Positions 25,233 to 58,072 of a stretch of DNA of 64,000 bases are shown here, in pieces. Numbering within the stretch: the first letter of the stretch is position 1; each line of letters starts with the position of its first letter. The stretch is from IMG/VR virus record IMGVR_UViG_3300028654_000384, positions 124,001-188,000 of that record; one strand, written 5' to 3'. The notes under the pieces are model-generated. The model did not search any database and was not told where the DNA came from. It saw only the letters and a list, made by a program, of their open reading frames with translations. The translations under genes were made by a program, and so were the position numbers.

Positions 25233-25255
25233 GAATTATACTCGAGGTGTAATTC
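25233..25255. promoter_or_regulatory. 23-bp palindromic operator GAATTATAC-N5-GTGTAATTC
   Basis: 7 bp upstream of the -35; one of five copies. Confidence 0.75.
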
Positions 25256-25340
25256 CTCGGGCCGCCCATGTGGGCGAGGTATGATACCCCGTCCCAGCAC
25301 CCGTGACGACACGGTGGGCGGTCTGTGGGTGGTGGTTCCG

Positions 25341-25613
25341 TCACCAGGTGGGCCTGGCATACTGTCGGGTGGGCATGTCATCCCAGTCGTCCGGGGCACC
25401 CACGGGATGCGTGGTCGAACGTGACAGGACGTCACGGGAGACGCTTGGTGCGTTCCTGACGGCGTCTCTTCGCGCATCGTCGAGGAGGATCGCCAGTGAA
25501 CCCGCGATGGCGGTGACTTCGGCCTCTGACTTGCCGTCATCGAGGCCCGTCTGGTAGATCCACAGGTGGGACAGCGCAAGGGTGCGAACATCGTGACGAT
25601 TGTTCTTCATCAT
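25341..25613 (-). CDS. hypothetical protein, paralog of 23860-24150 (leaderless)
   Basis: LALSHLWIYQTG motif; ATG 6 nt after -10. Confidence 0.7.
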   Translation of the reverse strand: MMKNNRHDVRTLALSHLWIYQTGLDDGKSEAEVTAIAGSLAILLDDARRDAVRNAPSVSRDVLSRSTTHPVGAPDDWDDMPTRQYARPTW

Positions 25614-25619
25614 GAATGT

Positions 25620-25673
25620 ACAGTACCACACTTGACCACGGCGCTTGCACTCTGCGCGGGAGGGTGGTACAAT
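25620..25673. promoter_or_regulatory. overlapping divergent promoters sharing one hexamer (GTGCAA-19-TACTGT on -, TTGCAC-17-TACAAT on +)
   Basis: Both -10 boxes are 6 nt from an ATG (25613 and 25680). Confidence 0.7.
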
Positions 25674-25679
25674 TGAAGC

Positions 25680-25871
25680 ATGAGAACCACGTTGATCACA
25701 TTCGTGGCACTCGTCATCACGTGTGTCATCGTCTCGTATGCCTGTGTCTACTCGCCGCCCAATTCCCTGCCCAACGGACACTCGCGGTGCGAGTACAACG
25801 CTGATTGTAGGCCACCCCAACAGTGTGACAGGGGCCTGTGTACCCTCGAACCCCATGACGTGGGGCGCTGA
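25680..25871 (+). CDS. small Cys-rich secreted/membrane protein
   Basis: Hydrophobic N-terminus; C..N..C....C....C disulfide pattern. Confidence 0.7.
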   Translation: MRTTLITFVALVITCVIVSYACVYSPPNSLPNGHSRCEYNADCRPPQQCDRGLCTLEPHDVGR

Positions 25872-26262
25872 TCACGTGCGCTCACTGAAGTGCGGGGGCG
25901 TTGACGTCTACGTAGACAGCTATTACACCCGTGGCACAGGCAGCACCTTCATCGGTGGTAACTTCTCGCTCGACAGTGCGATTGACTATGCTCGCCGCTC
26001 GCTTGAACTCCTATGGGGACCCAATCGTCACAGCGTCGTGGTGCCGCCCAAGGTGACAGCAGGCGGGCGCATTCCACAGCGCACGTTGATGATGTGGCTG
26101 CACTCCGACGAGCGGCCCATGGAACACCCAGGCGACGATGGATCACACCTGTTCCTCATCTGGTTTGCTGACGATGATCCCATCGATGCACTGCAGGACG
26201 CGGTGCGGCACCTCGATGGCATGGGTGGCTGGTGGCCACACGCGAAGGGTTACGTGCTATGA
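25855..26262 (+). CDS. hypothetical protein
   Basis: ORF track with adjusted ATG. Confidence 0.65.
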   Translation: MTWGADHVRSLKCGGVDVYVDSYYTRGTGSTFIGGNFSLDSAIDYARRSLELLWGPNRHSVVVPPKVTAGGRIPQRTLMMWLHSDERPMEHPGDDGSHLFLIWFADDDPIDALQDAVRHLDGMGGWWPHAKGYVL

Positions 26263-26453
26263 GCACCGGCGATAGGTTGAGACAACTGGCGATGGCGTGG
26301 CGCAAACAAGTGGCTAGCGATGCGTTGAGTCACGTGGGTAGCAATAGCGAGATCCGCCGGGCGAGGGGCGAACGCCTGCTGATGTGCGCAGGCGAACTTG
26401 AGGCGCTGGCGAGAGAAGTCGACAAGGCAGTCACGTCAACCGATTGCTCCTGA
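26259..26453 (+). CDS. hypothetical helical protein
   Basis: ATGA overlap. Confidence 0.55.
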   Translation: MSTGDRLRQLAMAWRKQVASDALSHVGSNSEIRRARGERLLMCAGELEALAREVDKAVTSTDCS

Positions 26454-26706
26454 TGTAGCAGGTGCGGCCTACACACACGATCTGGCAATACGAGTGGTGT
26501 ACCCCCGACATGGTGATGACTGCCAACACTAGCGCTAGTTCACCATTGCACCACACGCTGCGCGCCACGACTCCCGCGCCGTATCCTACAGTATAGAACG
26601 GAAACGGGCGGGTGTAGCCCCAGCCCTTGGCCACGTACAGTTCCCCGGGTTTGCGGATCAAGTCAACGTCAGGGGTATTGAGTTCAGTGGGCATGCACGT
26701 CCTCAA
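26431..26706 (-). CDS. KOW/SH3-like PGxL family protein
   Basis: KPGELY..LALVLAV..QIVCVGRTCYI. Confidence 0.7.
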   Translation of the reverse strand: MRTCMPTELNTPDVDLIRKPGELYVAKGWGYTRPFPFYTVGYGAGVVARSVWCNGELALVLAVITMSGVHHSYCQIVCVGRTCYIRSNRLT

Positions 26707-26956
26707 AGAATTGGTGATAGCCCCAACCCAGCTTGCCTGTCGGTGTCAACACCAACACCTCGAGCGTGCCATTGGAGTTCACCGCGACGGCGACAGCTAA
26801 CACCACTTTGAGTGGCTCTATGCGATCGATGATTGGGTTGGCACTGAGTGCAGAGATGCCTATGCGCGCGCTGACGTTGACATAAGAGTCCTGATCAGGC
26901 AACCTGCTGCGTATGCGAACCAGCATGCCTGGGAGAATGCGGCCATGCGGCGCCAT
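26684..26956 (-). CDS. KOW/SH3-like PGxL family protein
   Basis: LPGMLV..VVLAV..VLVLTPTGKLGW. Confidence 0.75.
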   Translation of the reverse strand: MAPHGRILPGMLVRIRSRLPDQDSYVNVSARIGISALSANPIIDRIEPLKVVLAVAVAVNSNGTLEVLVLTPTGKLGWGYHQFFEDVHAH

Positions 26957-29895: not shown

Positions 29896-30167
29896 GCCAA
29901 CACCAAGTCACTGTCGAAGATCCACCCAACAATGCCGTCTGACGTTAGCACACAGATCCACCAGATGTTGGCTGACCACACGTAGTCAATGATCAAACCA
30001 GCAGTGCCACACCGGGCATATATCACCAGTGATGGTACCTCATCTTTGGGGTGCCTAGTGCGGATGCTGACCGTTACCAACTTCCTCTTATTGTAGAGAA
30101 AGATCAACGTCCCACGTGCATGGATCGTAGGCTGCACAAAGGGTGCTGGGGTTGGTGTGGAGATCAT
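29892..30167 (-). CDS. KOW/SH3-like family protein
   Basis: ARGTLI..GLII..ICVLTSDGIVGWI. Confidence 0.7.
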   Translation of the reverse strand: MISTPTPAPFVQPTIHARGTLIFLYNKRKLVTVSIRTRHPKDEVPSLVIYARCGTAGLIIDYVWSANIWWICVLTSDGIVGWIFDSDLVLA

Positions 30168-30430
30168 GGAACATCACTCGTCTTCGCTATGCGAACGGCG
30201 CGGAAGATCGCTCCGATCACGTGGCTGCCTTCGAGCGCGCGAGATAACCCATTACAGTTCAACCACGTCAGGATGCCTTCGGCGCGGGCGACCAACAGGT
30301 TAACGCCACCGATGAGCACGAAGCGATGCTCGACGGATGACCATATCTCTTCATGCGTGACAACCTCATTGCCGTTACGGGTGTACACCCACTTGATGAG
30401 GTCGCCGGGCTTCAATTCACTCGGCGTCAT
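30164..30430 (-). CDS. KOW/SH3-like PGxL family protein, WxY/IGGV subfamily
   Basis: KPGDLIKWVY..EEIWS..IGGVNLL..LTWL; cf. 47217 and 57660. Confidence 0.75.
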   Translation of the reverse strand: MTPSELKPGDLIKWVYTRNGNEVVTHEEIWSSVEHRFVLIGGVNLLVARAEGILTWLNCNGLSRALEGSHVIGAIFRAVRIAKTSDVP

Positions 30431-31208
30431 CAGGTGCAACCCAATCCTGACCCTTGGTGAATGAACCGCGGTTCTCGATGCCCGTCTTGGTCAAGGCGAC
30501 GACGAACGTTTTCCCGCTACAACCCCACCTGTTCTTGCTGACCTCGAACAACAGGCCCCCAAACGTCGGGCTCTTCTTGTTCTCGTCGTACGACAGGTGG
30601 GCATGGACGTCGATGGCGTGGCGGATGGTGTTCTTGCCCGCGAATTCTCCACCCTTGGTACATTGTCCCACGAAGATGCAGAAGGCGAAGTTCTGCTGGC
30701 ACCAGGCGACCAACATCTCAGTGCAGCGCACCGGGGTGTTGCCCGTCGTCCCACCGTCCTTGTACTTCATGTCGTTCAACGTCTGCAGTGAATCTTGCAG
30801 TAGGACGATGACCTTGCCCGGGTTGGCCTTCTTGACGCCGTCGAGGAACTTCAACAGCTTAGGCAGGTTAGTCTCCTCGGCGACCATGAAGTCGTGCTTC
30901 AACTGCAACCGTTCAACGGCCAGCTTGGCCTGAAACAGGCTCTCTTCGCCCGTGTTGTAGACGACGATGTGACCCGCACCCGTCAGCGTCGACGCCAACT
31001 GGCGCACCAGCGTTGACTTGCCGGTGCCCGGGCCACCCGTCAGCATCAGCGTCGTCGTCGCGGTGAAGCCACCTTCGCCGCCCAACGCCTCGTCGATCCA
31101 ATCGAGGCCCGTCGAGTGCTTGACCCGCAGTTCGGGTGGCACCGCGATGGTGCTGATCTTCGTCCCAGCCTTGAAACCACGCCCAACGTGCAGATTCATC
31201 TCGGCCAT
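30417..31208 (-). CDS. RecA-superfamily ATPase, RadA/Sms-like core only
   Basis: TGLDWIDEALGG, GGPGTGKST, YNTGEES, DSLQT, GQCTKGG..AG, KNRWG (RadA KNRFG-like); no Zn finger or Lon-like domain. Confidence 0.85.
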   Translation of the reverse strand: MAEMNLHVGRGFKAGTKISTIAVPPELRVKHSTGLDWIDEALGGEGGFTATTTLMLTGGPGTGKSTLVRQLASTLTGAGHIVVYNTGEESLFQAKLAVERLQLKHDFMVAEETNLPKLLKFLDGVKKANPGKVIVLLQDSLQTLNDMKYKDGGTTGNTPVRCTEMLVAWCQQNFAFCIFVGQCTKGGEFAGKNTIRHAIDVHAHLSYDENKKSPTFGGLLFEVSKNRWGCSGKTFVVALTKTGIENRGSFTKGQDWVAPDDAE

Positions 31209-31270: not shown

Positions 31271-31384
31271 TCACCGAGCCAGGATGAACATGCCCAGTGC
31301 GACCCACGAGGCGCCACAGACGACGAGGGCAGCGCTCCAGAACATCACCATCTCGGCCCGACTTGCCTTTGCTTCCTTCATCAT
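31271..31384 (-). CDS. single-TM micropeptide (37 aa, leaderless)
   Basis: MMKEAKASRAEMVMFWSAALVVCG..; ATG 6 nt after -10. Confidence 0.6.
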   Translation of the reverse strand: MMKEAKASRAEMVMFWSAALVVCGASWVALGMFILAR

Positions 31385-31390
31385 GATCTA

Positions 31391-31420
31391 ATCCTACCAC
31401 GGTCGCCGGCGAACTTGCAC
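31391..31420 (-). promoter_or_regulatory. phage promoter GTGCAA-18-TAGGAT (leaderless)
   Basis: Consensus match. Confidence 0.85.
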
Positions 31421-31427: not shown

Positions 31428-31450
31428 GAATTATACCCCGGGTGTAATCC
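31428..31450. promoter_or_regulatory. 23-bp palindromic operator GAATTATAC-N5-GTGTAATCC
   Basis: 7 bp upstream of the -35. Confidence 0.75.
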
Positions 31451-31594: not shown

Positions 31595-31624
31595 GTGTAA
31601 GTCCCCGGTGAATCGTGGTAGAGT
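31595..31624 (+). promoter_or_regulatory. phage promoter GTGTAA-18-TAGAGT (leaderless)
   Basis: TAGATC then ATG 31631. Confidence 0.85.
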
Positions 31625-31630
31625 TAGATC

Positions 31631-31930
31631 ATGGTAGCAAATAGGTCTCGCCTCAACGTGCCCATCCACAGTGCTCGCAAGTTCAGGTGGAGCAACGATT
31701 TCACCGGCAGTGCCGAGGTGTCTGACTTCAGCCGAACAATCAGCTCGCGGGTGTACACCGATGCCGCGGACGTGGGTTTCATCTGTGAATCACCGCGGAC
31801 GGGTAAACAGGTGCTGTTCACGTTGTGTGAAGAAGAACGGCACGATGGTGAGTTGGTGTCGGAGACCTACGTGTCGTGCGCTTTTGGGGGTTGGGTGCCC
31901 GACATGCGCATCATAATCTTCAACGACTGA
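31631..31930 (+). CDS. hypothetical protein (leaderless)
   Basis: Own promoter. Confidence 0.7.
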   Translation: MVANRSRLNVPIHSARKFRWSNDFTGSAEVSDFSRTISSRVYTDAADVGFICESPRTGKQVLFTLCEEERHDGELVSETYVSCAFGGWVPDMRIIIFND

Positions 31931-31931
31931 A

Positions 31932-31961
31932 GTGCAAGTTCAACTCCGAACCTGGTAGGAT
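31932..31961 (+). promoter_or_regulatory. phage promoter GTGCAA-18-TAGGAT (leaderless)
   Basis: TAGATC then ATG 31968. Confidence 0.85.
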
Positions 31962-31967
31962 TAGATC

Positions 31968-32264
31968 ATGATCAAATACAAGCGTGCCCCTGCCGGGTAC
32001 ATTGCCCAGTTCTTCACAGACGAGAAGCTCCCATACCCGGGCGCGGTCAACCAGGATTACCGTGACAACCATTTCATGGACGTGACAGGAGACTGGTGTC
32101 CCACTCTCCCGGAGGCGATCGAGTCAGTCAAGAAACAACGTCCCAAGGAGATCAAGAAGCTCCAGAAAAAGCTCGAAGCGCTTGAGGCGAGAGCTCAGGA
32201 ACTGAGGGCTTACATCAAACAACTCCAGGAAACGTCAGCGACCTCCGTCGAAGAGAAAGTCTGA
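31968..32264 (+). CDS. hypothetical protein with C-terminal coiled coil (leaderless)
   Basis: Own promoter. Confidence 0.7.
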   Translation: MIKYKRAPAGYIAQFFTDEKLPYPGAVNQDYRDNHFMDVTGDWCPTLPEAIESVKKQRPKEIKKLQKKLEALEARAQELRAYIKQLQETSATSVEEKV

Positions 32265-32305
32265 GGAAGATCTGTGCAAGTTCAACTTCGAACCTGGTGG
32301 TTGCA

Positions 32306-32335
32306 GTGCAAGTTGCCCTGCAACTGGCATAGGAT
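32306..32335 (+). promoter_or_regulatory. phage promoter GTGCAA-18-TAGGAT (leaderless), preceded by a decayed copy at 32274
   Basis: TAGATC then ATG 32342. Confidence 0.85.
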
Positions 32336-32341
32336 TAGATC

Positions 32342-32584
32342 ATGGCAAAGAGAACCCTCAAAGTCGGCGACGAATTCCACAAGGGCCTGTGCATTGTGCG
32401 GGTGATGACCCTCGAGAACCCGGGCAGGTTCCCGGTACGCTACGTGTGGGTCGTCGAGGCCAATGGCCGCCGCGAAGCGGACCATTGTGGCCGTGAAATG
32501 GCCGGCGTCAATTCGGTCAGCGGCACCTTCAAGTTCCTCGAAGGCGAGGGCTTCACCTATCACCCGGTGCAAGTCACCGCCTGA
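32342..32584 (+). CDS. small beta-rich protein, SH3-like (leaderless)
   Basis: LKVGDEF..IVRV..VRYVW. Confidence 0.7.
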   Translation: MAKRTLKVGDEFHKGLCIVRVMTLENPGRFPVRYVWVVEANGRREADHCGREMAGVNSVSGTFKFLEGEGFTYHPVQVTA

Positions 32585-32596
32585 TCGTGGTAGAGT
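32567..32596 (+). promoter_or_regulatory. phage promoter GTGCAA-18-TAGAGT (leaderless)
   Basis: TAGATC then ATG 32603. Confidence 0.85.
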
Positions 32597-32602
32597 TAGA
32601 TC

Positions 32603-33034
32603 ATGGCAAAGAAAGTAGCAAAGAAGTCATCCAAGGCGACACCGTCTCACTACTGCGTCGGCGACACATTTGTACACTCCGACCACAACGCGGGAGTGCA
32701 CATCCGGGTAGTAGCTGTCACCTCTAACTCGGTGTCTTACACGTGGCACTATTCGCCCGGTGGTGTCGGCGAGCCACCGTGGAAACAGCCCGTGTCACAT
32801 TCACAGTTTCAAACGCTGCTCACTGACTTTGGCTTCACAAAGCAAAGCTGTAACAAGAGACGCGCGGCGCTCGTCGATCACATTGCACTGGCGGTGTGCA
32901 ATGCGTTCAACCGAGAGGTCAGCAACGCGCTCAGTGAATTGACTCCCGTGTCGCCCGGGCTCATTGAACACGATGGGGCGATGATCATCATGAAAGATGC
33001 AGTGCACGCCGCCATTCAGCGCTTGACTTCGTAG
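32603..33034 (+). CDS. hypothetical protein, N-terminal SH3-like part (leaderless)
   Basis: CVGDTF..IRVVAV..VSYTW. Confidence 0.7.
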   Translation: MAKKVAKKSSKATPSHYCVGDTFVHSDHNAGVHIRVVAVTSNSVSYTWHYSPGGVGEPPWKQPVSHSQFQTLLTDFGFTKQSCNKRRAALVDHIALAVCNAFNREVSNALSELTPVSPGLIEHDGAMIIMKDAVHAAIQRLTS

Positions 33035-38711: not shown

Positions 38712-38894
38712 CTACGGCACCTCGATGACGTGTGACTGGGCGATGAGGTTGCCGTCGCTGTCGAGGGTGACGGTGTGGACCCACTGGCCGTCGCAGTACC
38801 AGCAGCACTCGAGCTCGATGAGGGGCTCGGTGGGAATGTTGTTGATGAGCCGGGTGTGCCAGAGGTGGTCACCGGGGCAGAAAGTGGGGTCCAT
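38712..38894 (-). CDS. hypothetical protein with CxxC (leaderless)
   Basis: CCWYC; ATG 6 nt after -10. Confidence 0.7.
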   Translation of the reverse strand: MDPTFCPGDHLWHTRLINNIPTEPLIELECCWYCDGQWVHTVTLDSDGNLIAQSHVIEVP

Positions 38895-38900
38895 GATCTA

Positions 38901-38930
38901 ATCCTACCAGGAACGGGTGGTCTCTTGCAC
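38901..38930 (-). promoter_or_regulatory. phage promoter GTGCAA-18-TAGGAT (leaderless)
   Basis: Consensus match. Confidence 0.85.
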
Positions 38931-38937: not shown

Positions 38938-38960
38938 GAATTATACCCGGAGTGTAATTC
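38938..38960. promoter_or_regulatory. 23-bp palindromic operator GAATTATAC-N5-GTGTAATTC between divergent promoters
   Basis: 7 bp from the left -35. Confidence 0.75.
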
Positions 38961-38978: not shown

Positions 38979-39008
38979 GTGCAAGTCTCAAGTAAACCGT
39001 GGTACAGT
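38979..39008 (+). promoter_or_regulatory. phage promoter GTGCAA-18-TACAGT (leaderless)
   Basis: TAGATC then ATG 39015. Confidence 0.85.
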
Positions 39009-39014
39009 TAGATC

Positions 39015-39260
39015 ATGGACCCCAACAGCAGCTTCGAGATGGAGTGGATCATCTGCATCAACTTGCAGCCGGCGCCCTCGGTGATCACCAAGCTACCCAA
39101 TGTCTACTTGACCAACGTGAACGTCGACACCCGGGTCACCACCAACATCTACCAGGCGCAGGGTTACCACTACAAGTCAGACGCTCGGGTCGCTGCCGAG
39201 CTGACCGGTGTGGTCTACGACATTCGCCGACGACGTGACTTCCGCGCCTCAACGGTGTAA
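39015..39260 (+). CDS. hypothetical protein (leaderless)
   Basis: Own promoter. Confidence 0.7.
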   Translation: MDPNSSFEMEWIICINLQPAPSVITKLPNVYLTNVNVDTRVTTNIYQAQGYHYKSDARVAAELTGVVYDIRRRRDFRASTV

Positions 39261-42338: not shown

Positions 42339-42361
42339 GAATTACACCCCGAGTATAATTC
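42339..42361. promoter_or_regulatory. 23-bp palindromic operator GAATTACAC-N5-GTATAATTC
   Basis: 8 bp upstream of the -35 at 42370. Confidence 0.75.
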
Positions 42362-42369: not shown

Positions 42370-42399
42370 GTGCAAGCGCACTGACTTCTGGCTTACAGT
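42370..42399 (+). promoter_or_regulatory. phage promoter GTGCAA-18-TACAGT (leaderless)
   Basis: TAGATC then ATG 42406. Confidence 0.85.
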
Positions 42400-42405
42400 T
42401 AGATC

Positions 42406-43149
42406 ATGAGGACGATAGGAATCATGACGATGGCCTGCCTGGTGGGAGCAACGCTCCCACTGGTTGCCTGTGGCGGCGCGCCCCCGGCAGCGCCCCCCGA
42501 GCTGACGAGTGCCTGCGCCGGCCATACCTGCAGTGGGGGTTCCACCCCCACCAGCCCCACCGACCCTTCACTTGCCCCCACCGTGTCGCCCCCAAGCGCT
42601 TCGTCGGTGCCGGCGAAGGAATCCCCTTCGCCTGAGGCGGGGATTTTACCTGATGCCGCCACGGTGCCAGTGGGGGCAACGCCCCCACCAGCCCCACCAT
42701 CGACCCCGCTTCCCGACGCTGCCAGTGAGGGTTCAACCCTCACCGCCGTCGATATCGATGCAGGTACCATGGTCAGTGTCCCCGAAGTCGATGCCGGGCC
42801 CGATGCGCCGGTTATGGCCGTGCTTCAAACCGACGCCGCGCCACTGCCCGATCCCTGTGCTGGTGCGAGTGGGGGTTCCACCCCCACCATGGTTCCTCGT
42901 GCCTATCCGGGCGGCGGTGGCATCGGTTGTGCGCGGCTCGCGGGTACCGGCACCTCGGTGCCTTGCCAGTGCTTCGTTACTGCTGGTGAGGGCGGCACCC
43001 TCACTGCCACCGCGCTGGCCCTTACCGTCTGCGGGCCGACGGGCTGCAACTGCATCGCCAACGACGGCGAGGGCCCGGCTGACCGCCCGTACTGCATCGG
43101 GCCCAAGTGCACCGCTGACCAGATCGCCAACCAGACGTGCTGGTATTGA
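42406..43149 (+). CDS. lipoprotein with Pro/Ser/Thr linker and Cys-rich C-terminal domain
   Basis: Lipobox LVACGG; DAG repeats; nine C-terminal Cys. Confidence 0.75.
   Translation: MRTIGIMTMACLVGATLPLVACGGAPPAAPPELTSACAGHTCSGGSTPTSPTDPSLAPTVSPPSASSVPAKESPSPEAGILPDAATVPVGATPPPAPPSTPLPDAASEGSTLTAVDIDAGTMVSVPEVDAGPDAPVMAVLQTDAAPLPDPCAGASGGSTPTMVPRAYPGGGGIGCARLAGTGTSVPCQCFVTAGEGGTLTATALALTVCGPTGCNCIANDGEGPADRPYCIGPKCTADQIANQTCWY
42725..42743. repeat. palindrome GTGAGGG-N5-CCCTCAC (copy 2)
   Basis: Exact arms. Confidence 0.5.
42986..43004. repeat. palindrome GTGAGGG-N5-CCCTCAC (copy 3)
   Basis: Exact arms. Confidence 0.5.
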
Positions 43150-47106: not shown

Positions 47107-47216
47107 AAACCCCTGATCCCAAGCCGTGAGGTGGGCTGTAAGTGACCCCTCCCTACATGGCAAAGGCACGTGCAACCCACCTCACGGCTTGGGATCCTTT
47201 CTACAGTGTTGCTAAC

Positions 47217-47531: not shown

Positions 47532-47702
47532 ATGCAGGTCTATAAGCACACGGAAATTCAGGCGGTGTTGGCCATGTTCTCCGCCTTCAACATCGAAGTT
47601 GAAGTGGTCGAGGGCGGTGCCAACCAACCCATGACGATCCACACCAAGTTGTTTCAACGCAAAGACGGAGAGTACGCTGATGAACCCGAAGAGACTGTTT
47701 AG
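47532..47702 (+). CDS. hypothetical protein (56 aa)
   Basis: TATAAT upstream; overlaps next start. Confidence 0.4.
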   Translation: MQVYKHTEIQAVLAMFSAFNIEVEVVEGGANQPMTIHTKLFQRKDGEYADEPEETV

Positions 47703-48798
47703 CTCGCTCGCCGCACTGCTGGTGGGGCTGGGCGTCGTTGGCACCGCCAGTGCGCAGGAAACGGGTCACGACAAGGATATTCACGATCGTGATTATTGCG
47801 ACAAGGTGCAGGCCCGCGCCCATGCTGATGCGTGGTTGTTGTTCTCGCCGTCGCTGCAGGTGCAGGGCATCAAGTACCCGGCGGGGGCACCGGGCGTCGT
47901 CGCGGTTGGTGGATCAGAAACTCCCGGTGGTTATCAGGTTCGTAGCTCACTATTGTGGAGCCCGCTCGATGCCTACAAGGGCACCGTCGAACAAGCCGTC
48001 GCAAATAAGGATTGCCTGCAACACTCGGCCATGGTCGATGCCCAAAATCTTTTGGAGATGATGAATGACGTCGGCCGAGCACCTGCATTGCAGGCCGAGG
48101 TGACGTACCTCAAGTTCCATGCCGACGATATGAACGACATTCTCACCAATGTGCATAAACGCCTTGTGATTGGTCACAGCACGATCATCGAACTCGCTGC
48201 TGTACAGGCAGGCATCGATCTGCTTGAACGCAAGCTCGCCGCAGCGCAGGGTCAACTGTCACTCATCGAAACGAAGGATTATGTCGTTACACCACGCTCG
48301 TCGACAGAGATCGTCGAGCGATTACAACGCTACTCAATGGAATATGAGAAAGAGACGGCACGACTCAGATCGATCGATCCATGGGCTATCAGCGTGTCAG
48401 GCGGCGTTGTCCCGCCCATGGGCGACGGTGGTTCGGCGGCGTGGTTTGGCATGGTGACGGTGCAGTATAATTTCGGGGGTTTCGTCCGCGGGGCTGATGA
48501 GAGCAAGTATCTCTCAGCCCGCCAGCACGAACTGCAATATGCTCGTTACGAACTTGCTGATCAGGTTCGGCGTTTACAAGATGGCATTCAGGTGGGCATC
48601 GAATCTGCGGATGCCGAAATCGTCACGCTTGACAAGCGTATCAGTGAACTTAATGACCTATGTGAGCAGTTAAAGCTTCATATTGAAGCACCCAATGCTA
48701 TGAGCACATTAGGCGTCGTTGAGCTTCAGCACATGGATGCGGTGAGTGATAGGTTGTACTTGATCGAACTACGTCGGCAATTGTCGGCGTGGAAGTGA
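47680..48798 (+). CDS. secreted TolC/outer-membrane-factor-like protein
   Basis: Sec signal (ASA|Q); two repeats of amphipathic beta-hairpin plus long coiled coils. Confidence 0.55.
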   Translation: MNPKRLFSSLAALLVGLGVVGTASAQETGHDKDIHDRDYCDKVQARAHADAWLLFSPSLQVQGIKYPAGAPGVVAVGGSETPGGYQVRSSLLWSPLDAYKGTVEQAVANKDCLQHSAMVDAQNLLEMMNDVGRAPALQAEVTYLKFHADDMNDILTNVHKRLVIGHSTIIELAAVQAGIDLLERKLAAAQGQLSLIETKDYVVTPRSSTEIVERLQRYSMEYEKETARLRSIDPWAISVSGGVVPPMGDGGSAAWFGMVTVQYNFGGFVRGADESKYLSARQHELQYARYELADQVRRLQDGIQVGIESADAEIVTLDKRISELNDLCEQLKLHIEAPNAMSTLGVVELQHMDAVSDRLYLIELRRQLSAWK

Positions 48799-48820
48799 TG
48801 AAAGTAACGAGAGAGGGAAT

Positions 48821-49909
48821 ATGACAATGGAACAGACCATGGAAACTGCACGCGCCTCTGCACAAATTAACGTGGGGCGGTTTTGGAAGACGCGTGTCTT
48901 CTCGTTTGTGGCATTAGCATCAATGGTGGGTGGCTGCGGCGCCATGGTGCGAGAGGGCTATTTTGTCACTACCGATTCCTTCGTTGCCCCGGCGATTTTG
49001 TCGCCTAATAACGATCTCGTCCTCGACGCACGTTTGAAGCTGGAACAAATCATGTTACAGAAGGGTATTGCCGAACAGGCATTGACGGAAGCCGAGGGCG
49101 ACATCAATGCAGGTGAACAAGCAACGATCAAGTTGATCGAATTGCGTGACACCATTAGTCATGCACTGACGTGGACCAGCAACTTGACAGGTGCGCAAGT
49201 GACGATGGGTAACGCCGATGTTAAGGTCATTGCGACACAGAAGGATGAGTTACAAAACATGATTGCTCGTCAAGAGCAGCTAGTTGAAGACGCTAAATTG
49301 AATATGAATGGCGGGTTGATCGCGCGTCCTGATTATGACCGCGAGGTGCAGGCGCTTGACTCGCTGAAACTAGCACAGTTCGAAAATGACAGGACGCGTA
49401 TGGCTAGCGACCTACAGTTGAAACAGGCTAGTATGGGTCAGCAGGCGCTACTTGCGGGTAAGGGCACCAAGATGCCGATGCCCGATCAGGTCATGGTATT
49501 GAACTCATTGATTACGGTCGAGGTGCAGTTGTTGCAGACGGAAGAATTGCAGAGAACGAAGATTGCTGAGAAGGAAAAAGATCAGGAAGAATTGAAGAAG
49601 ATTGAGTCGCTAGAGAGCGATCTGCGATCGCGGCCTATTTTCAAGGCAATTGATAGTAACGTAGATTTGAGCTTTGCACCATATTCTGCTTTGAAGAATA
49701 TTGTTGTGGGTGCGAAAGTGATGAATTGTGTTTGGGGAGTTTTCAATTGTAAGGAAGTTGGAAAAGTGAAAGAAATTATCTCTGGTGAGGCAGTTCTTCC
49801 CGCAATTTTTGGAACGGGGCAAACAAGAGGACAATTTATTGCAGTTGAGCTAAATGATGCAGATCATGATGCTTCAATGAAAAGTACGATTCTAAGAATC
49901 CGAAACTAA
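48821..49909 (+). CDS. HlyD/membrane-fusion-protein-like periplasmic adaptor
   Basis: N-terminal TM/lipobox-like GGC, long central coiled coil, beta-rich C-terminus. Confidence 0.55.
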   Translation: MTMEQTMETARASAQINVGRFWKTRVFSFVALASMVGGCGAMVREGYFVTTDSFVAPAILSPNNDLVLDARLKLEQIMLQKGIAEQALTEAEGDINAGEQATIKLIELRDTISHALTWTSNLTGAQVTMGNADVKVIATQKDELQNMIARQEQLVEDAKLNMNGGLIARPDYDREVQALDSLKLAQFENDRTRMASDLQLKQASMGQQALLAGKGTKMPMPDQVMVLNSLITVEVQLLQTEELQRTKIAEKEKDQEELKKIESLESDLRSRPIFKAIDSNVDLSFAPYSALKNIVVGAKVMNCVWGVFNCKEVGKVKEIISGEAVLPAIFGTGQTRGQFIAVELNDADHDASMKSTILRIRN

Positions 49910-49919
49910 AGGACATCAG

Positions 49920-51662
49920 ATGGATACTATTCTTTGGCGTTTGCATGATTCCATGCATCTTGCATGGGTTGTTATTTTTGCACTCGTAGTCAGTCTTTGT
50001 TTGCTCAACGTCCACTACATTCCTGTAGTATTTCGTACAGCATTCAGAAGGTTGGTATCTGGCAATTCTTCACATACGCCCAAGAATATGGGCAATTGCC
50101 CTACTGGACTTGTAATCATTCCATCGCTGCTTAGAAACGAAGAAGATTATACCGCCATCATTGCCACAGTAGAAAGTTGTGCTTCTAATCAATACCCCAA
50201 TGATTTGTATATCATAGTTAGTATTGATGGGAAGAACGAGAATCAAAAATTATTTGCACAACTAGCTAACTGGCTCGATTCAAGATCGTACTCTAACACT
50301 GTAAAACTGCACCTCACATATGATGAGGTTCGTCGTAGCAAAATGATGGCTATCGATCGTGGGGCACAGTATATGAAAGCCCTTGTTGCTAGTGGCGCGG
50401 TGTCATCCTTTCCCACCATCTATTTTAGCATCGACGCTGACTCTATTCTTAGTGAGCAAGCTCTCAATAGAATGGCATCTCAGCTAAATACTCCACACCC
50501 AATTACCGGTAACAAAAGGCGAACTATTGCCGGAACTCCGATGGTTCACTCGCACGTGTTATGGCAAGGTTGGCGCTCATTCTTTACGATTGAAAATCAG
50601 ATCTATCTCAATGTTGCTCGTATGTTTATGATGTCAGGTGTTGCTCGTAGCAATTTGGGTGTTATTCCTTACATTGGAGTGCCAGGAGCTATTTACGCTA
50701 CTTGGAGTGAGATTCTATTGGATGCTCCTAAGTTTATGGGTTACATAAGATCCATTACATTTATTGACTGGCTACGTTGGTGGGTGGGAATTCCTCTTCC
50801 TACGTTTGCAGAATCTAGCGCTGAGCCAATTCCTCAATTGTTGACAGGAAACACAGATGATACAAGTATGGCGGTTGTAATTTCAATCTCTACTTGGCAA
50901 GACAATAGGTTTGTTCTTGAGTTGCCAAGATCTCCACTTCATGCGTTTGGCAGATTGCTTCGCTCTTGGTTTATTGAACGAACGCATAATCACGATCCAG
51001 AATCGAAAGCTTATACTTATGTTCCTCCTTCTATTAAGGGATTGTGGCTTCAACGAAAACGATGGAACAGCTCGAGAATTGAATTAAATTTGAGATTCTC
51101 AAAAGCATTTTTGTTTTGCTGGGACACTGGATTTCCGTTTATGTTTCAGCTATCTATTGTTGGAATAATTTTCTTTCGAGTGTTGCTGACATACGTTATA
51201 ATTCCATTCGTCATATTTGGTGAAGCCTCCAACGTCTTCTATTGTTTGATGGTGGGTATGACGTTGAGTTTTATTTGTAATCTCATTCTTACATTGACCG
51301 CACTTGCAATGGATACTGAACGACGTAGATATTGGGCGGTGTTGCTTGCGTTACCAACGGCTGGTTTGTTTTCTCTCGTGTTCGGTGCAACCGTAGGTAT
51401 TTGGGGATTTATGAAAGACGTATTGTGGAAAGGAAACAATGTTAAATTCACACCAGCTTCTACGTTGATAACTGGTGGAAGTCAGCGAATTGCAATTGCA
51501 TTTCGTGTTCAGCGATTCCTATCAATGTGTATTCGTTCATTACGATATGGTGATGTTCCGTTCGGTCTTTGGTGGGGATCTTGGTATGAAAGAGTGCCCT
51601 ATGTTCGTAACGGTTATGCAGATTGGTCTAACAAAAAGAACAGTCAATACGTGCTAAAATGA
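49920..51662 (+). CDS. processive GT2 polysaccharide synthase (cellulose/chitin/hyaluronan-synthase fold)
   Basis: D (SIDG), DxD (SIDADS), TDD, QRKRW; N-terminal TM and several C-terminal TMs. Confidence 0.88.
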   Translation: MDTILWRLHDSMHLAWVVIFALVVSLCLLNVHYIPVVFRTAFRRLVSGNSSHTPKNMGNCPTGLVIIPSLLRNEEDYTAIIATVESCASNQYPNDLYIIVSIDGKNENQKLFAQLANWLDSRSYSNTVKLHLTYDEVRRSKMMAIDRGAQYMKALVASGAVSSFPTIYFSIDADSILSEQALNRMASQLNTPHPITGNKRRTIAGTPMVHSHVLWQGWRSFFTIENQIYLNVARMFMMSGVARSNLGVIPYIGVPGAIYATWSEILLDAPKFMGYIRSITFIDWLRWWVGIPLPTFAESSAEPIPQLLTGNTDDTSMAVVISISTWQDNRFVLELPRSPLHAFGRLLRSWFIERTHNHDPESKAYTYVPPSIKGLWLQRKRWNSSRIELNLRFSKAFLFCWDTGFPFMFQLSIVGIIFFRVLLTYVIIPFVIFGEASNVFYCLMVGMTLSFICNLILTLTALAMDTERRRYWAVLLALPTAGLFSLVFGATVGIWGFMKDVLWKGNNVKFTPASTLITGGSQRIAIAFRVQRFLSMCIRSLRYGDVPFGLWWGSWYERVPYVRNGYADWSNKKNSQYVLK

Positions 51663-52618
51663 AAATTTTATCGCTTATAGCTCTAGTACTGTCTTCGTGT
51701 GTAAGTAGCAATCTCTATTTTAGAGAAGTTCACGCTAAAAAGCCAACATTTTCATTAGAGGAGAAAAAAATGACAGTCATAAACAACGATTCTGTGCGTG
51801 GACTATTTGTGTGGGATGATGTTGCTAACTCAGAAGAGGAAATTACCAGTTTAGTAACTTTTTGTAAAGTAAAGGAAATCAACGTAGTATATGCATCATT
51901 GTATAGTCACTTACTTGTAAAAAAAGATTTTGTCGCAGTTCAAAATCTACTCAATAGTTTGCATTCCAACGGAATAAAAGTTCATGCATTGTTTGGTAAT
52001 TCAGATTACGGTTCCAAAAAACAATGGGTTGTTGAAAACGTTGGCGAAGCAGTAGTTCAATATAATTCAGTATCATCTGATAAAATCGATGGTGTGTTGC
52101 TAGACGCTGAGTATTGGTCTGGTAGTGCTGGACATCATACGCAAGCCGATGCGATAGGCATGATGGATCTAATAAGGGCACTAAAAATAAAAACTGGCAC
52201 GCCAGTTGGATTTAGCCCTCCGTACTGGTTTGCAGATCCTAAAAATAATCAAGCGCTGGACGTTGTTTATGATGGACACACAATGAAAGAAGGTCAGCAC
52301 ATGATTTATGTTGCGGACTACGTTGTAGTGCAGGACTATTTTAGTGATCCACAAAAACAGATTGAACATTTCAATCCGTGGTTTGATTTTGCAGTTTCTA
52401 CCGGTAGAAATGTTGGTTTGGTGTTGGCATCAGAAGTTAGTGAGCCATCGAAACTAGCTCATGCCTATTCCTATAATAGACTACAGGTGGGTGATGAGGC
52501 GCACATGCAGTCTAGCCTGGCCAGCGTTTCGCAATTCTATACAATGAAGCACGGTGCAGACAGGGTATGGTGGGGTTGTGCTATTGAGCAGTATCGTTCG
52601 TATCGTCAGATGAAGTAA
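51659..52618 (+). CDS. lipoprotein glycoside-hydrolase-like TIM barrel (GH18-like)
   Basis: Lipobox LSSC; RGLFVWD, KVHALFG, IDGVLLDAEYW; GTGA/ATGA-type overlap with synthase. Confidence 0.6.
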   Translation: MKILSLIALVLSSCVSSNLYFREVHAKKPTFSLEEKKMTVINNDSVRGLFVWDDVANSEEEITSLVTFCKVKEINVVYASLYSHLLVKKDFVAVQNLLNSLHSNGIKVHALFGNSDYGSKKQWVVENVGEAVVQYNSVSSDKIDGVLLDAEYWSGSAGHHTQADAIGMMDLIRALKIKTGTPVGFSPPYWFADPKNNQALDVVYDGHTMKEGQHMIYVADYVVVQDYFSDPQKQIEHFNPWFDFAVSTGRNVGLVLASEVSEPSKLAHAYSYNRLQVGDEAHMQSSLASVSQFYTMKHGADRVWWGCAIEQYRSYRQMK

Positions 52619-56303: not shown

Positions 56304-56304
56304 A

Positions 56305-56334
56305 GTGTAAGTTAACACCCAACAGTGATAGGAT
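56305..56334 (+). promoter_or_regulatory. phage promoter GTGTAA-18-TAGGAT (leaderless)
   Basis: CTGATC then ATG 56341. Confidence 0.85.
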
Positions 56335-56340
56335 CTGATC

Positions 56341-56961
56341 ATGGCATACGACGAAGCATTCTTCACCGCCTACCGCGCCTACCTGCAGGAGACCCTCGTC
56401 AGGAAGAACCACAGGCGAGCCTTCGATCACCTCATCGGCCTGATGACCGACGGGCCCATCGATTACGCTCCTCGCGTCGTCGACCTGGGTTGTGGTACCG
56501 GTGAGTTCTACGAGCGGGGTTATCACCGCGACTACGTCGGCATCGATCTCAATCCACGCATTGCCTGGCAGGGCGCCAAGGTGATCAAGGCCTCCAGCGT
56601 CGACGTCGATGCATGGAGCAAGCAGCTACCCTTCGAGCCCAACACCTTCGTCAGCGTGTTCTCGATCGAGCCAATGCGGGGCGCGTACTATCGCTACGAG
56701 CTGTACGATCGCCTGTTCAGGGAGTTGCCGTCGCTGCAGTTCGGCATGTCGGCAGGTTTCTACTATGACAATGAGCGTATGGGCGACCGCAAGGTCAGCG
56801 AGGCGGGTGGCATCGTCAGCTGGCAGACCAACCAACTGTTGGGCAAGGACGGTGATCGCAGCCTGTACAATGAAGAGTGGCTGACGATGCGGACGCCGTC
56901 GCAGATGTTCGGGCCCGACGTCGTCGAGGTCTGGAAGTTCTTCAGTCGAGTGCAGCCGTGA
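56341..56961 (+). CDS. class I SAM-dependent methyltransferase
   Basis: VVDLGCGTGE, YVGIDLN motifs. Confidence 0.85.
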   Translation: MAYDEAFFTAYRAYLQETLVRKNHRRAFDHLIGLMTDGPIDYAPRVVDLGCGTGEFYERGYHRDYVGIDLNPRIAWQGAKVIKASSVDVDAWSKQLPFEPNTFVSVFSIEPMRGAYYRYELYDRLFRELPSLQFGMSAGFYYDNERMGDRKVSEAGGIVSWQTNQLLGKDGDRSLYNEEWLTMRTPSQMFGPDVVEVWKFFSRVQP

Positions 56962-57392
56962 AGCAGTGGTACTTTCCGCTGGCCCGCGTCGAGCAGGATG
57001 ACAACTACGGTTGTGCCATTGCGTCGGTGGCGACGGTCTGCGGCGTCACCTATGGTCGAGCGCGAGCCGAGTTCTTTCCCAAGCGGCGCGACTTCGACGA
57101 CAACCGAACGCTGTGCGTGCGCGGTCACCACATGCTGCGCGTCATTCACAAGTTGGGCTTCAAGGCGCACTTCCACCATGGGACCTACGGGCACTTCAGG
57201 TGCCCGGTGCTGGTGCCCTTCGCGTGGTTCCCGCCCGATCCCAATTGGATCCACTGCGTCGTCTGGGATCCCTTCGGAGAAGAGTACATTGATCCCGGGC
57301 CCGATCACAACGACCCGGCGCCCAACAACAGGTACACCAAGCTGTGGCGCAAGAGCAACTTTCGCGTCATCGTCGTCACCGGCAAGAGGTAG
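56958..57392 (+). CDS. C39-like papain-fold cysteine peptidase
   Basis: Q....GCAIA (Q/C), HCVVWD, YIDPG. Confidence 0.7.
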   Translation: MKQWYFPLARVEQDDNYGCAIASVATVCGVTYGRARAEFFPKRRDFDDNRTLCVRGHHMLRVIHKLGFKAHFHHGTYGHFRCPVLVPFAWFPPDPNWIHCVVWDPFGEEYIDPGPDHNDPAPNNRYTKLWRKSNFRVIVVTGKR

Positions 57393-57397
57393 GTCAC

Positions 57398-57679
57398 ATG
57401 GTCACCAAGAGCATCGCCAAGCGCCTCGACGCAATGCAGAAGCACAAGCAACCCAAGGTGCCCGTCTTCCCGCCGTCGGCACAGACGACCTATGACAAGG
57501 CGCTGTGCATCAGCACCGAAGGTGGGCCCATGGCGTGGGTTGCCTACGGCATCATGAGCCGCATGAGCGTGCTGTATGCAGCTAACACGGATGCCTTCGA
57601 CAATGAGAAGATGATGGCTGCCATGTTGACCATGGTGAACACGCTGTCGGCGTACGTCGATGCCACAACCTCAACATGA
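57398..57679 (+). CDS. hypothetical protein
   Basis: GAGG RBS. Confidence 0.65.
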   Translation: MVTKSIAKRLDAMQKHKQPKVPVFPPSAQTTYDKALCISTEGGPMAWVAYGIMSRMSVLYAANTDAFDNEKMMAAMLTMVNTLSAYVDATTST

Positions 57680-58001
57680 GCTGAAGGGCGGCGGGACACT
57701 ACGTCCTGGCGACTTGATCGAGTGGGTCTATACCGTCGGCAGGGACCTCGTCTATGCTGACGACATGATGTGGTCACCAGAGATGCAGTCGTCGGTGGCG
57801 ATCGGCGGCGTCCACCTGTTGGTCAGTCTCCGCGTCGGCCTTGGACTTGCATGGTGGGAGATGACGTGGTTGCCACTGGGCGACGGCCCGGATCGTATGG
57901 GATTGTGTAGCATCGCCATTGTTCATACGTCTCCTGCACGACCCAGGCGAATGACCGAAGGTGCTCGGGGCCATGGCCAGCCGCGCCGGCGCTACCTATG
58001 A
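57660..58001 (+). CDS. KOW/SH3-like PGxL family protein, WxY/IGGV subfamily
   Basis: RPGDLIEWVY..MWS..IGGVHLL..MTWL; start uncertain. Confidence 0.65.
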   Translation: MPQPQHELKGGGTLRPGDLIEWVYTVGRDLVYADDMMWSPEMQSSVAIGGVHLLVSLRVGLGLAWWEMTWLPLGDGPDRMGLCSIAIVHTSPARPRRMTEGARGHGQPRRRYL

Positions 58002-58049
58002 TAGGGGAAACTACCTTCGTTCGAGTGCATCATCCTAGGGCGGCTCGTG

Positions 58050-58072
58050 GAATTGTACCCGAGGTGTAATCC
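58050..58072. promoter_or_regulatory. 23-bp palindromic operator GAATTGTAC-N5-GTGTAATCC
   Basis: 8 bp upstream of the -35 at 58081. Confidence 0.7.

What the first reader, a model, noticed from the sequence alone, without database searches (positions are those of the whole stretch)
25233..58072. Five copies of a 23-bp palindromic operator fixed 7-8 bp upstream of the -35 box
Seen: GAATTRYAC-N5-GTRTAATYC at 25233, 31428, 38938, 42339 and 58050, all intergenic and each 7 or 8 bp from a GTGYAA element. One copy sits between divergent promoters. No obvious regulator gene is adjacent. Inference: a dimeric phage regulator controlling a sub-regulon (the fixed position near -55 suits an activator), or less likely a recombination site flanking promoter-gene cassettes.
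Basis: partly seen in the sequence, partly recalled or inferred. Interest (0 to 1): 0.68.

Follow-up and report, generated by a model that had tools for sequence, protein, structure and literature searches.

The report
Palindromic operator upstream of jumbo-phage promoters
A 23-bp palindrome sits at a fixed place (about 55 bp upstream of the predicted transcript start) in front of a subset of the near-identical, leaderless promoters of an uncultured 358-kb soil phage, and is most likely the docking site of a still unidentified dimeric regulator.

Summary
Five exact copies of GAATTRYAC-N5-GTRTAATYC lie in the window, against 0 expected by chance. Four looser copies lie elsewhere in the same phage, which joins into at least 357,755 bp.

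All nine copies are intergenic and fall in a 72-kb region of small orphan genes. Each belongs to a member of one promoter family, RGTGYAAGT-N13-TGGTAnnnT-TAGATC-ATG, which is predicted to be leaderless and has about 30 members.

In six of nine copies the palindrome centre lies 55 or 56 bp upstream of the predicted +1. The other distances are -66, -85, -85 and -88.

The same palindrome occurs in four related uncultured phage lineages whose flanks are unrelated. It is absent from a complete 369-kb relative. In relatives a second palindrome (TTGAAAGCACTTTTCAA) holds the same slot at about -53.

The hairpin is weak and has no T-run. No recombinase gene was found, long contigs show no rearrangement, and no bacterial genome is enriched for the site.

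My best reading is a cis-operator for a dimeric, probably phage-encoded regulator of a sub-regulon. The position favours class-I-like activation. The binder and the sign of regulation are not established.

One twist is that each half-site resembles the promoters' own -35-like box. I rate this a new variant of a known kind, of moderate interest.

The parts
25233..25255 (.). T1 palindrome copy 1 (GAATTATACTCGAGGTGTAATTC). Its centre is 55 bp upstream of the predicted +1 of the minus-strand promoter.
25189..25225 (-). Family promoter served by copy 1: GTGTAAGT box, TGGTAGAGT extended -10, TAGATC, then the ATG at 25189 (predicted leaderless).
   Evidence: the +1 position is inferred from the 6-nt distance between the -10 and the ATG
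25001..25189 (-). 63-aa orphan gene downstream of copy 1.
31428..31450 (.). T1 copy 2 (GAATTATACCCCGGGTGTAATCC), centre at -55 of the minus-strand promoter.
31384..31420 (-). Family promoter served by copy 2. It drives a 37-aa hydrophobic ORF (31274-31384). A second family promoter and a 263-aa gene conserved in relatives follow.
38938..38960 (.). T1 copy 3 (GAATTATACCCGGAGTGTAATTC), between divergent promoters. Its centre is at -55 on the minus side and -66 on the plus side.
38894..38930 (-). Minus-strand family promoter of the divergent pair. It drives a 60-aa Cys-rich orphan (38715-38894).
38979..39017 (+). Plus-strand family promoter of the divergent pair. It drives an 81-aa orphan (39015-39257).
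42339..42361 (.). T1 copy 4 (GAATTACACCCCGAGTATAATTC), centre at -56. It is preceded by a 33-bp module (42306-42338) that recurs inverted beside the copy at genome 199759.
42370..42408 (+). Family promoter served by copy 4. Its extended -10 is weaker (GGCTTACAGT). It drives a 247-aa protein with a lipoprotein-like signal sequence (42406-43149).
58050..58072 (.). T1 copy 5 (GAATTGTACCCGAGGTGTAATCC), centre at -56.
58081..58119 (+). Family promoter served by copy 5. It drives a 98-aa orphan (58117-58413).
31595..32605 (+). Four members of the same promoter family without T1, with ATG at 31631, 31968, 32342 and 32603. They serve as internal controls: the same core promoter with no palindrome.

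Best explanation
T1 (consensus GAATTACAC-N5-GTRTAATTC) is a cis-acting operator. It is probably bound by a dimer of a sequence-specific DNA-binding protein, most likely phage-encoded and not yet identified. It sets apart a sub-regulon: ten promoters served by nine sites, out of roughly thirty near-identical promoters that drive small orphan genes in the 149-222 kb region of an uncultured jumbo myovirus.

In six of nine copies the site is centred 55-56 bp upstream of the predicted +1. That places it just upstream of the promoter's -35-like box (G at -36). A bound dimer would therefore sit beside RNA polymerase rather than under it. I take the most likely action to be class-I-type modulation by contact or recruitment, which leans towards activation or a change in timing.

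What is shown: the sites, their number, their positions, their conservation across phage lineages, and the exclusion of several rivals.

What is inferred: that the ATG is +1, that a protein binds, that it binds as a dimer, that it is phage-encoded, and the sign of regulation.
For: (1) The number of sites is far above chance, and the sites are confined to promoter-upstream DNA.

(2) The geometry is fixed. The gap to the GTGYAA box is 7-8 bp in six copies. The centres lie at -55 or -56 (six copies), -66, -85, -85 and -88.

(3) The arm sequence is conserved, not only its ability to pair. The cores TTACAC and GTGTAA are centred 11 bp apart, one helical turn, as expected for a dimer reading two successive major grooves. 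This is read directly from the sequences.

(4) The same palindrome occurs in four other uncultured phage lineages whose flanks are unrelated: C (G001/G002, 5 copies), D (G011), E (L251) and F (L252).

(5) It is absent from a complete 369-kb relative and from a 309-kb relative that keep the promoter family. It therefore behaves as an accessory regulatory element.

(6) In relatives B, C, E and F a different palindrome (T2, TTGAAAGCACTTTTCAA) holds the slot centred near -53. At the orthologous promoter upstream of the conserved 263-aa gene, this phage has T1 where phage B has T2.

(7) The hairpin is weak: -2.5 to -5.4 kcal/mol as DNA, and in two of five copies the best fold is not the T1 hairpin. 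No T-run follows.

(8) The perfect site gives only 7 single hits in 185,579 species genomes, about the number I estimate for chance, and no genome has more than one.
Against: No binder was found.
- Pfam scans of about 340 ORFs of the phage listed no classical helix-turn-helix regulator apart from sigma-related proteins.
- About 150 ORFs in the first 114 kb were not scanned. For two of the three batches only the top 25 families were shown.

Promoters with T1 have core elements as close to the family consensus as those without it. Dependence on an activator is therefore not evident, and a repressor or a timing switch is equally possible.

The distances of -85 are not in helical phase with -55, -66 and -88.

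Some copies share longer flanking modules. Part of the copy number therefore reflects duplication of whole regulatory regions rather than independent selection.

There is no transcript or binding data. No RNA run holds this phage.
Confidence: 0.6

Rival explanations
1. Same-reader model. T1 is an inverted pair of the promoters' own -35-like box. It is read by the same phage factor that reads GTGYAAGT at -35, or by a paralogue of it. T1 would then act as an auxiliary docking or sequestering site for the phage's transcription machinery, not as the operator of a separate regulator.
For: - The half-site GTGTAATTC matches the box GTGYAAGTY at 8 of 9 positions and, on the promoter-proximal arm, in the same orientation.
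- Further GTGTAA boxes occur in other arrangements between T1 and the promoter at genome 207838-207868 and 209381-209412.
- No extra regulator gene is needed, which fits the empty search for one.
- The phage sigma-70-family protein P0001 has a shortened, divergent region 4.2 that ends early in three related phages.
- About 0.7 kb downstream of that sigma gene lies a 100-aa protein with an invariant helix-turn-helix-like stretch, conserved across 46 relatives.
- The GTGCAA box is likewise kept across relatives with 38-61% GC.
Against: - T1 half-sites consistently differ from the box. None of the 18 half-sites of this phage, nor any in the relatives' copies I listed, has C at position 4, although most -35 boxes do. 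Almost all half-sites (17 of 18 here) have T at position 7, where the box has G.
- Relatives with the same conserved proteins and the same promoter box lack T1 altogether.
- The 100-aa protein's model (pLDDT 81) gave no significant PDB fold match. The only link to Sigma70_r4 is an Atlas feature score of 0.87, which is below the level the tool treats as more than a lead.
Confidence: 0.17
2. Hijacked host operator. T1 is the binding site of a host transcription factor that the phage uses to tie a few genes to host physiology.
For: - No phage regulator was found.
- The patchy distribution among relatives could follow host range.
Against: - The perfect palindrome occurs only as 7 singletons in 185,579 bacterial and archaeal species genomes. 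No genome has more than one, and none of the seven loci resembles this phage.
- Only the perfect form was scanned, so a degenerate host regulon would have been missed. The host itself is unknown.
Confidence: 0.1
3. Recombination or cassette-boundary element. T1 plus its promoter would act like the promoter-early stem-loop (PeSL) motifs of T4-like phages. As repeated DNA, it would mediate shuffling, inversion or loss of the small orphan gene cassettes, with no regulatory role of its own.
For: - The layout is similar: a palindrome followed by a conserved promoter, flanking small orphan genes in a variable region. PeSLs are described in PMC2839356 and PMC4122927.
- A 56-bp module (33-bp flank plus T1) at window 42306-42361 recurs inverted at genome 199759-199814.
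- One low-depth Logan contig joins the two loci as an inversion would.
Against: - The odd contig crosses a 35-bp exact inverted repeat, longer than the 31-letter word I assume the assembler used, at depth of about 5. That can produce a chimera.
- The 6 places shown for 24 contigs, one of 359 kb, keep the reference order at 199759.
- No resolvase or tyrosine recombinase gene was found in 357 kb.
- Across lineages T1 is conserved while its flanks are not. Passive repeats would not show that pattern.
- T1 is a poor terminator, whereas the stem-loop of a PeSL is described as a terminator.
Confidence: 0.08
4. Nucleic-acid structure. T1 acts as an RNA or DNA hairpin: a terminator or processing site for the upstream gene, or a cruciform.
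For: It is a 9-bp inverted repeat with a 5-nt spacer. On one strand the mismatch would be a G-U wobble.
Against: - Folding energies are weak, and in two of five copies the best fold is not the T1 hairpin.
- There is no T-run, and the terminator scan does not call it.
- At 38938 both neighbouring genes point away from T1, so no transcript is expected to cross it.
- The arms are conserved in sequence and show no compensatory changes.
Confidence: 0.03

Closest known systems
P2/P4-type late promoters with the Ogr/Delta upstream dyad (TGT-N12-ACA)
   Same: A short element of dyad symmetry stands upstream of the -35 region of a set of promoters in one phage and defines a co-regulated set. The motif and its dependence on Ogr are described in PMC3931495. 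That the P2 element is centred near -55 is from my own knowledge.
   Different: The sequence differs, and here the arms are much longer (9 bp). No Ogr_Delta zinc-finger gene is present. T1 promoters keep a well conserved -35-like box. The same core promoter also occurs without the palindrome, so dependence on an activator is not evident.
PeSL (promoter-early stem-loop) cassettes of T4-like phages (PMC2839356, PMC4122927)
   Same: A composite of palindrome and conserved promoter is repeated between small orphan genes in a plastic genome region.
   Different: PeSL stem-loops are described as terminators, and the motifs as recombination points. T1 folds weakly, has no T-run, is conserved in sequence, marks only a third of the promoters, and showed no recombination junctions in long contigs.
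Class I activator sites of bacterial promoters, such as CRP at -61.5 and further turns upstream (own knowledge)
   Same: A two-fold symmetric site of about 22 bp lies upstream of and next to RNA polymerase. Several of the spacings differ by about one helical turn (-55, -66, -88).
   Different: The half-site order is CAC...GTG, not the CRP TGTGA...TCACA. The centre lies about 6 bp closer to the promoter than the classic -61.5. No CRP-like protein was seen in the phage.
Repressor operators repeated through actinophage genomes: the L5 stoperators and the phiC31 conserved inverted repeats (own knowledge)
   Same: A short conserved site is repeated many times in one phage genome and is linked to conserved promoters.
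   Different: Those belong to temperate phages with a known repressor and often lie inside transcribed regions or over promoters. Here no integrase was found, no repressor-like HTH_3 protein was found, and every site lies upstream of the -35 box.

Membership tests
Transcription-factor operator (generic dimer site) | Two-fold symmetric sequence with half-sites about one helical turn apart | tested here: met
   The cores TTACAC and GTGTAA are centred 11 bp apart in all nine copies.
Transcription-factor operator (generic dimer site) | Fixed position relative to promoters and absence from coding DNA | tested here: met
   The centre lies at -55 or -56 in six of nine copies. All copies are intergenic and none occurs elsewhere in 357 kb.
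Transcription-factor operator (generic dimer site) | Conserved in related genomes while the flanks diverge | tested here: met
   Lineages C, D, E and F carry it with unrelated flanks.
Transcription-factor operator (generic dimer site) | An identified cognate DNA-binding protein | tested here: not met
   No candidate emerged from the Pfam, PHROGs, presence/absence or fold work.
Transcription-factor operator (generic dimer site) | Protein binding and an effect on transcription | not testable with these tools
   This needs EMSA or footprinting and transcript mapping. No RNA run holds the phage.
P2 Ogr/Delta-type late promoter element | An Ogr/Delta zinc-finger activator gene in the genome | tested here: not met
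   PF04606 gave no match in G000, G005, G001 or G011.
P2 Ogr/Delta-type late promoter element | TGT-N12-ACA dyad upstream of the promoters | tested here: not met
   The T1 sequence is GAATTACAC-N5-GTGTAATTC. Only the position is alike.
PeSL promoter-terminator cassette | The stem-loop acts as, or looks like, a terminator next to an early promoter | tested here: not met
   The fold is weak, there is no T-run, and the terminator scan does not call it.
PeSL promoter-terminator cassette | Indel or rearrangement boundaries between close relatives fall at the motif | tested here: inconclusive
   One chimera-prone contig suggests an inversion. The 6 places shown for 24 contigs keep the reference order at one copy. 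The strains available were identical.
Site-specific recombination site | A recombinase encoded by the element | tested here: not met
   No Resolvase or Phage_integrase match was found.
Intrinsic terminator / structured repeat | A stable G+C-rich hairpin followed by a T-run | tested here: not met
Host global-regulator operator | Several copies upstream of genes in some bacterial genome | tested here: not met
   The scan found 7 singletons in 185,579 genomes. Only the perfect form was scanned.

The most novel reading that the evidence does not exclude
This phage clade may recognise its own promoters with a split machinery: a sigma factor whose region 4.2 is shortened, plus a separate, invariant small helix-turn-helix protein that reads the GTGYAA box. 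On that reading T1 is an inverted pair of a variant of that box. The 'operator' and the '-35 element' would then be two uses of one recognition code.
Probability: 0.15. Interest if true: 0.8.

Novelty: new variant of a known kind. Interest (0 to 1): 0.5.

Why it matters
Gene regulation in uncultured jumbo phages is almost unknown. This case provides a concrete, testable regulatory code:
- about thirty near-identical, apparently leaderless promoters;
- a defined subset tagged by one palindrome;
- a second palindrome that replaces it in relatives.

These short sequences could be used directly to fish for the binding proteins. Once a host is found, they could be used to sort early genes into temporal classes and to build controllable promoters. 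If the half-site and the -35-like box prove to be read by related factors, it would show a new way in which a phage organises promoter recognition.

Tried and rejected
**Looking for the binder**
- Pfam and PHROGs scans of the nine downstream genes found only orphans.
- Pfam scans over about 340 ORFs listed no classical regulator.
- Six-frame searches for WhiB, HTH_3, Sigma70_r4 and Ogr_Delta gave nothing for WhiB, HTH_3 or Ogr_Delta. Sigma70_r4 matched only sigma-related proteins.
- Presence/absence profiling compared T1-bearing phages (A, C, D, E, F) with T1-free ones (G009, B). It pointed to the 216-aa protein P0003, which is under T1/T2 control in lineages C and F. However, P0003 also occurs in the T1-free 309-kb relative, lacks any DNA-binding signal, and shares only its C-terminal domain with a protein in lineage D. 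I rejected it as an established binder.
- The 73-aa protein downstream of the copy at genome 209352 has one homologue, whose promoter lacks T1. Rejected.
- The stand-alone Sigma70_r4 protein P0002 is also present in the T1-free relative G009, so it is not specific to T1.
- The 100-aa conserved protein gave a confident model but no significant PDB fold match. It stays only a lead.

**Relatives and host**
- No cultured phage is close.
- The host remains unknown. My early guess of an actinobacterial host rested on TAGRRT-type -10 boxes and leaderless starts. It is weakened because the same promoter layout occurs in relatives with 38-46% GC.

**Recombination**
- The apparent 'divergence at the palindrome edge' turned out to be the phage's own copy at genome 220431 aligning to the copy at 38938. 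It is not a mosaic joint.

**Other negative results**
- A scan of viral contigs for T1 at 6-10 bp from GTGYAA added only unrelated AT-rich chance hits.
I reran it from the stored file.
- Literature searches found nothing on this phage group.

Full report
**Observation**

The pattern GAATTRYAC-N5-GTRTAATYC matches exactly at window 25233, 31428, 38938, 42339 and 58050. None is expected by chance: 100 dinucleotide-preserving shuffles gave a mean of 0.00. Allowing 3 mismatches adds nothing in the window. An alignment of the five loci shows that each palindrome is part of a longer conserved unit that runs on to '...TAGATCATG'.

**Where the window lies**

- The window is bases 124001-188000 of a 215,857-bp IMG/VR virus record.
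- A 99.8-kb IMG/VR contig overlaps the end of that record at 99.99% identity. It also overlaps a second record of 141,862 bp at 100% identity, in reverse. The phage sequence in hand is therefore 357,755 bp.
- Contigs of 359-361 kb of the same phage exist in public assemblies.
- The phage encodes two tail-sheath paralogues of about 1000 aa, a DnaE-type polymerase, ribonucleotide reductase, GroEL and malate synthase. Its family scans also matched IF-1, peptide deformylase and peptidyl-tRNA hydrolase families, and it carries an array of 15 predicted tRNA genes (two with an uncertain anticodon).
- It is found in rhizosphere metagenomes.
- It has no close cultured relative.

**The promoter family**

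Twenty copies of TAGATCATG occur in the first record. Eighteen of them are preceded by RGTGYAAGT, 13 bp, then TGGTAnnnT. Looser scans bring the family to about 30 members, all between 148.9 and 222.1 kb.

TGGTAnnnT reads as an extended -10. Six bases later comes the ATG that opens an ORF. I therefore infer that the transcripts are leaderless, with the A of the ATG as +1 and the G of GTGYAAGT at -36. This is inference; no RNA data exist.

A standard TTGACA/TATAAT scan calls none of these promoters. Their -35-like box is therefore not of the E. coli type.

**Census and geometry of the palindrome (T1)**

- The 357-kb sequence has nine copies at 3 or fewer mismatches: the five in the window plus genome 199759, 207808, 209352 and 220431. 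There are no others.
- All are intergenic.
- The gap to the GTGYAA box is 7 or 8 bp in six copies.
- The distance from the centre to the predicted +1 is -55 (three copies), -56 (three copies), -66 (the second promoter of the divergent pair at 38938), -85 (two copies) and -88.
- The cores TTACAC and GTGTAA are centred 11 bp apart.
- In this phage one arm usually reads ATAC instead of ACAC. In most copies that arm lies on the promoter side.

**Downstream genes**

The nine genes directly served by T1 are orphans in Pfam and PHROGs. They include a 37-aa hydrophobic peptide, a 247-aa protein with a lipoprotein-like signal, and several proteins of 60-98 aa. At 220431 the served promoter is followed by about 190 nt without an ORF. 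That stretch folds moderately (z = -2.2) and matches no Rfam family.

**Relatives**

The phage's sigma-70-family protein P0001 has 135 relatives in IMG/VR, on contigs of up to 369 kb and 35-61% GC. The promoter layout GTGCAA, about 16 bp, TGGTAnnnT, 6 nt, ATG is seen in many of them, down to 38% GC.

T1 is much rarer:
- Lineage C (G001/G002): five copies of the perfect form AATTACAC-N5-GTGTAATT.
- Lineage D (G011): two copies. One has GTGYAA boxes 7 bp and 4 bp away on its two sides.
- Lineage E (L251): two copies.
- Lineage F (L252): one degenerate copy.

A complete 369-kb relative with terminal repeats has none, and neither does a 309-kb relative.

In C, E and F, T1 is followed at once by a second palindrome, T2 (TTGAAAGCACTTTTCAA). 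T2 then occupies the place centred near -53, and T1 moves out to about -75 to -82. Lineage B (G003/G004) has T2 only, and this phage has T1 only.

Upstream of the conserved 263-aa gene (66% identical between the two phages), this phage has a T1 promoter where B has a T2 promoter. I read T1 and T2 as interchangeable operator modules for one promoter slot.

**Rivals tested**

- Hairpin or terminator: DNA folds are -2.5 to -5.4 kcal/mol, and in two of five copies the best fold is not the T1 hairpin. There is no T-run. At 38938 no transcript should cross the site.
- Recombination: neither a resolvase nor an integrase gene was found.
  - Laying contigs of four runs gave one 1,745-nt contig that joins window 41677-42361 to the reverse of the left flank of genome 199759.
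  - The two loci share an exact 35-bp inverted repeat, and depth was about 5, so a chimera is likely.
  - The 6 places shown for 24 contigs that carry the gene next to 199759 keep the reference order.
- Host operator: the perfect palindrome gives 7 single hits in 185,579 species genomes, none of them related to the phage.

**Search for the binder**

No classical regulator appears in about 340 ORFs. Three leads were followed.

1. *P0003 (216 aa).* It lies behind T1 in this phage and directly under T1+T2 in C and F. However, it is also present in a T1-free relative and shows no DNA-binding signal.
2. *Sigma P0001.* It has regions 2, 3 and 4.1. Its region 4.2 is shortened and divergent, and the protein ends early in the same way in three phages.
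3. *A 100-aa protein about 0.7 kb downstream of the sigma gene.* It has a helix-turn-helix-like stretch that is nearly invariant in 46 relatives. It is fused to the next gene's product in one relative. Its model is confident (pLDDT 81) but has no significant PDB match. An Atlas feature hit to a partly Sigma70_r4 cluster scores 0.87, which is only a lead.

None of these is tied to T1 by evidence.

**Half-site and -35 box**

The half-site GTGTAATTC and the box GTGYAAGTY agree at 8 of 9 positions. Extra GTGTAA boxes stand between T1 and the promoter at two copies. However, none of the 18 half-sites of this phage has C at position 4, while most boxes do, and 17 of the 18 have T at position 7 where the box has G. 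The two motifs are related but distinct. This keeps the 'same or paralogous reader' model alive as a minority view.

**Verdict**

- T1 is a real, non-random, promoter-linked cis-element that is conserved across phage lineages.
- The best-supported mechanism is an operator for a dimeric regulator that marks a sub-regulon of an otherwise uniform promoter family.
- The position next to, not under, the polymerase site favours class-I-like action. The sign of regulation and the binder are open.
- This is a familiar kind of element in an unfamiliar setting: an uncultured jumbo-phage clade with its own promoter code.

Noticed in passing
window 31595-32605 and, genome-wide, 148.9-222.1 kb: A family of about 30 near-identical promoters, RGTGYAAGT-N13-TGGTAnnnT-TAGATC-ATG, each opening a small ORF at a predicted leaderless ATG. 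The discriminator nearly always contains GATC. The same layout occurs in relatives from 38 to 61% GC.
   Followed up: partly
genome 203218-204063 (L117:5218-6060), outside the window: A sigma-70-family protein (regions 2, 3 and 4.1) whose region 4.2 is shortened and divergent. The protein ends the same way in three phages. There are 135 relatives in IMG/VR and none in cultured phages.
   Followed up: partly
genome 204733-205035 (L117:6733-7032) and 205053-205514: Two small helix-turn-helix-like proteins, conserved next to the sigma gene in all relatives. The 100-aa one has a nearly invariant stretch (NYREIA...MNHSSARNYVLRVM). In one relative (L151) the two are fused into one ORF.
   Followed up: partly
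G005:57561-57836 (L123:17561-17836): A stand-alone 92-aa protein with a Cys/His-rich N-terminus and a clear Sigma70_r4 match (E 1.4e-8), in an AT-richer spot. A 74% identical copy is present in the complete relative G009.
   Followed up: partly
window 47680-52618: A low-GC island (40-49% against about 58%) with four ORFs of 372, 362, 580 and 319 aa. None matches Pfam or PADLOC. It looks like foreign DNA of unknown function.
   Followed up: partly
window 30164-30439, 47142-47495 and 57660-58001, plus nine more places genome-wide: A 12-member paralogue family of proteins of 82-117 aa (MKPGDLIEWVY...WSS...IGG.HLL...LTWLPLG) with no Pfam match. One member ends 49 bp before the T1 copy at 58050.
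   Followed up: partly
L098:1250-1455 minus strand (genome about 220,500-220,700): The T1-served promoter at genome 220431 is followed by about 190 nt without an ORF before the next promoter. The stretch folds moderately (z = -2.2) and matches no Rfam family. It could be a small RNA or a long leader.
   Followed up: partly
window 58008-58049; genome 199710-199758 and 209300-209351: A module of about 45 bp (AACTACCT...TCCTAGGGCGG...) stands just upstream of three T1 copies. A 33-bp module left of window 42339 recurs inverted to the right of genome 199759. Their function is unknown.
   Followed up: partly
genome 207838-207868 and 209381-209412: An everted pair of GTGTAA boxes (GTGTAACACGGCAC-GAT-GTGCCTTACAC) is inserted between T1 and the promoter in two duplicated regulatory regions.
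   Followed up: no
G001:6718, 7363, 16816 and 17010; G004:3174; G003:9074; L251:8237: A second palindrome, TTGAAAGCACTTTTCAA, is centred near -53 of the same promoter family in relatives and is absent from this phage.
   Followed up: partly
genome 197.3-199.3 kb; window 5210-6868; genome 104342-105976: The phage has an array of 15 predicted tRNA genes (two with an uncertain anticodon), GroEL and malate synthase. Its family scans also matched IF-1, peptide deformylase, peptidyl-tRNA hydrolase (two ORFs) and several sugar-modifying enzyme families. An IF-1 homologue may be relevant to leaderless translation.
   Followed up: no
genome 9151-9876, 13057-13848, 69352-69861 and 312366-313100: Four paralogous ORFs. 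The one scanned (genome 9151-9876) is a GIY-YIG/NUMOD homing endonuclease. They are scattered among structural and replication genes.
   Followed up: no
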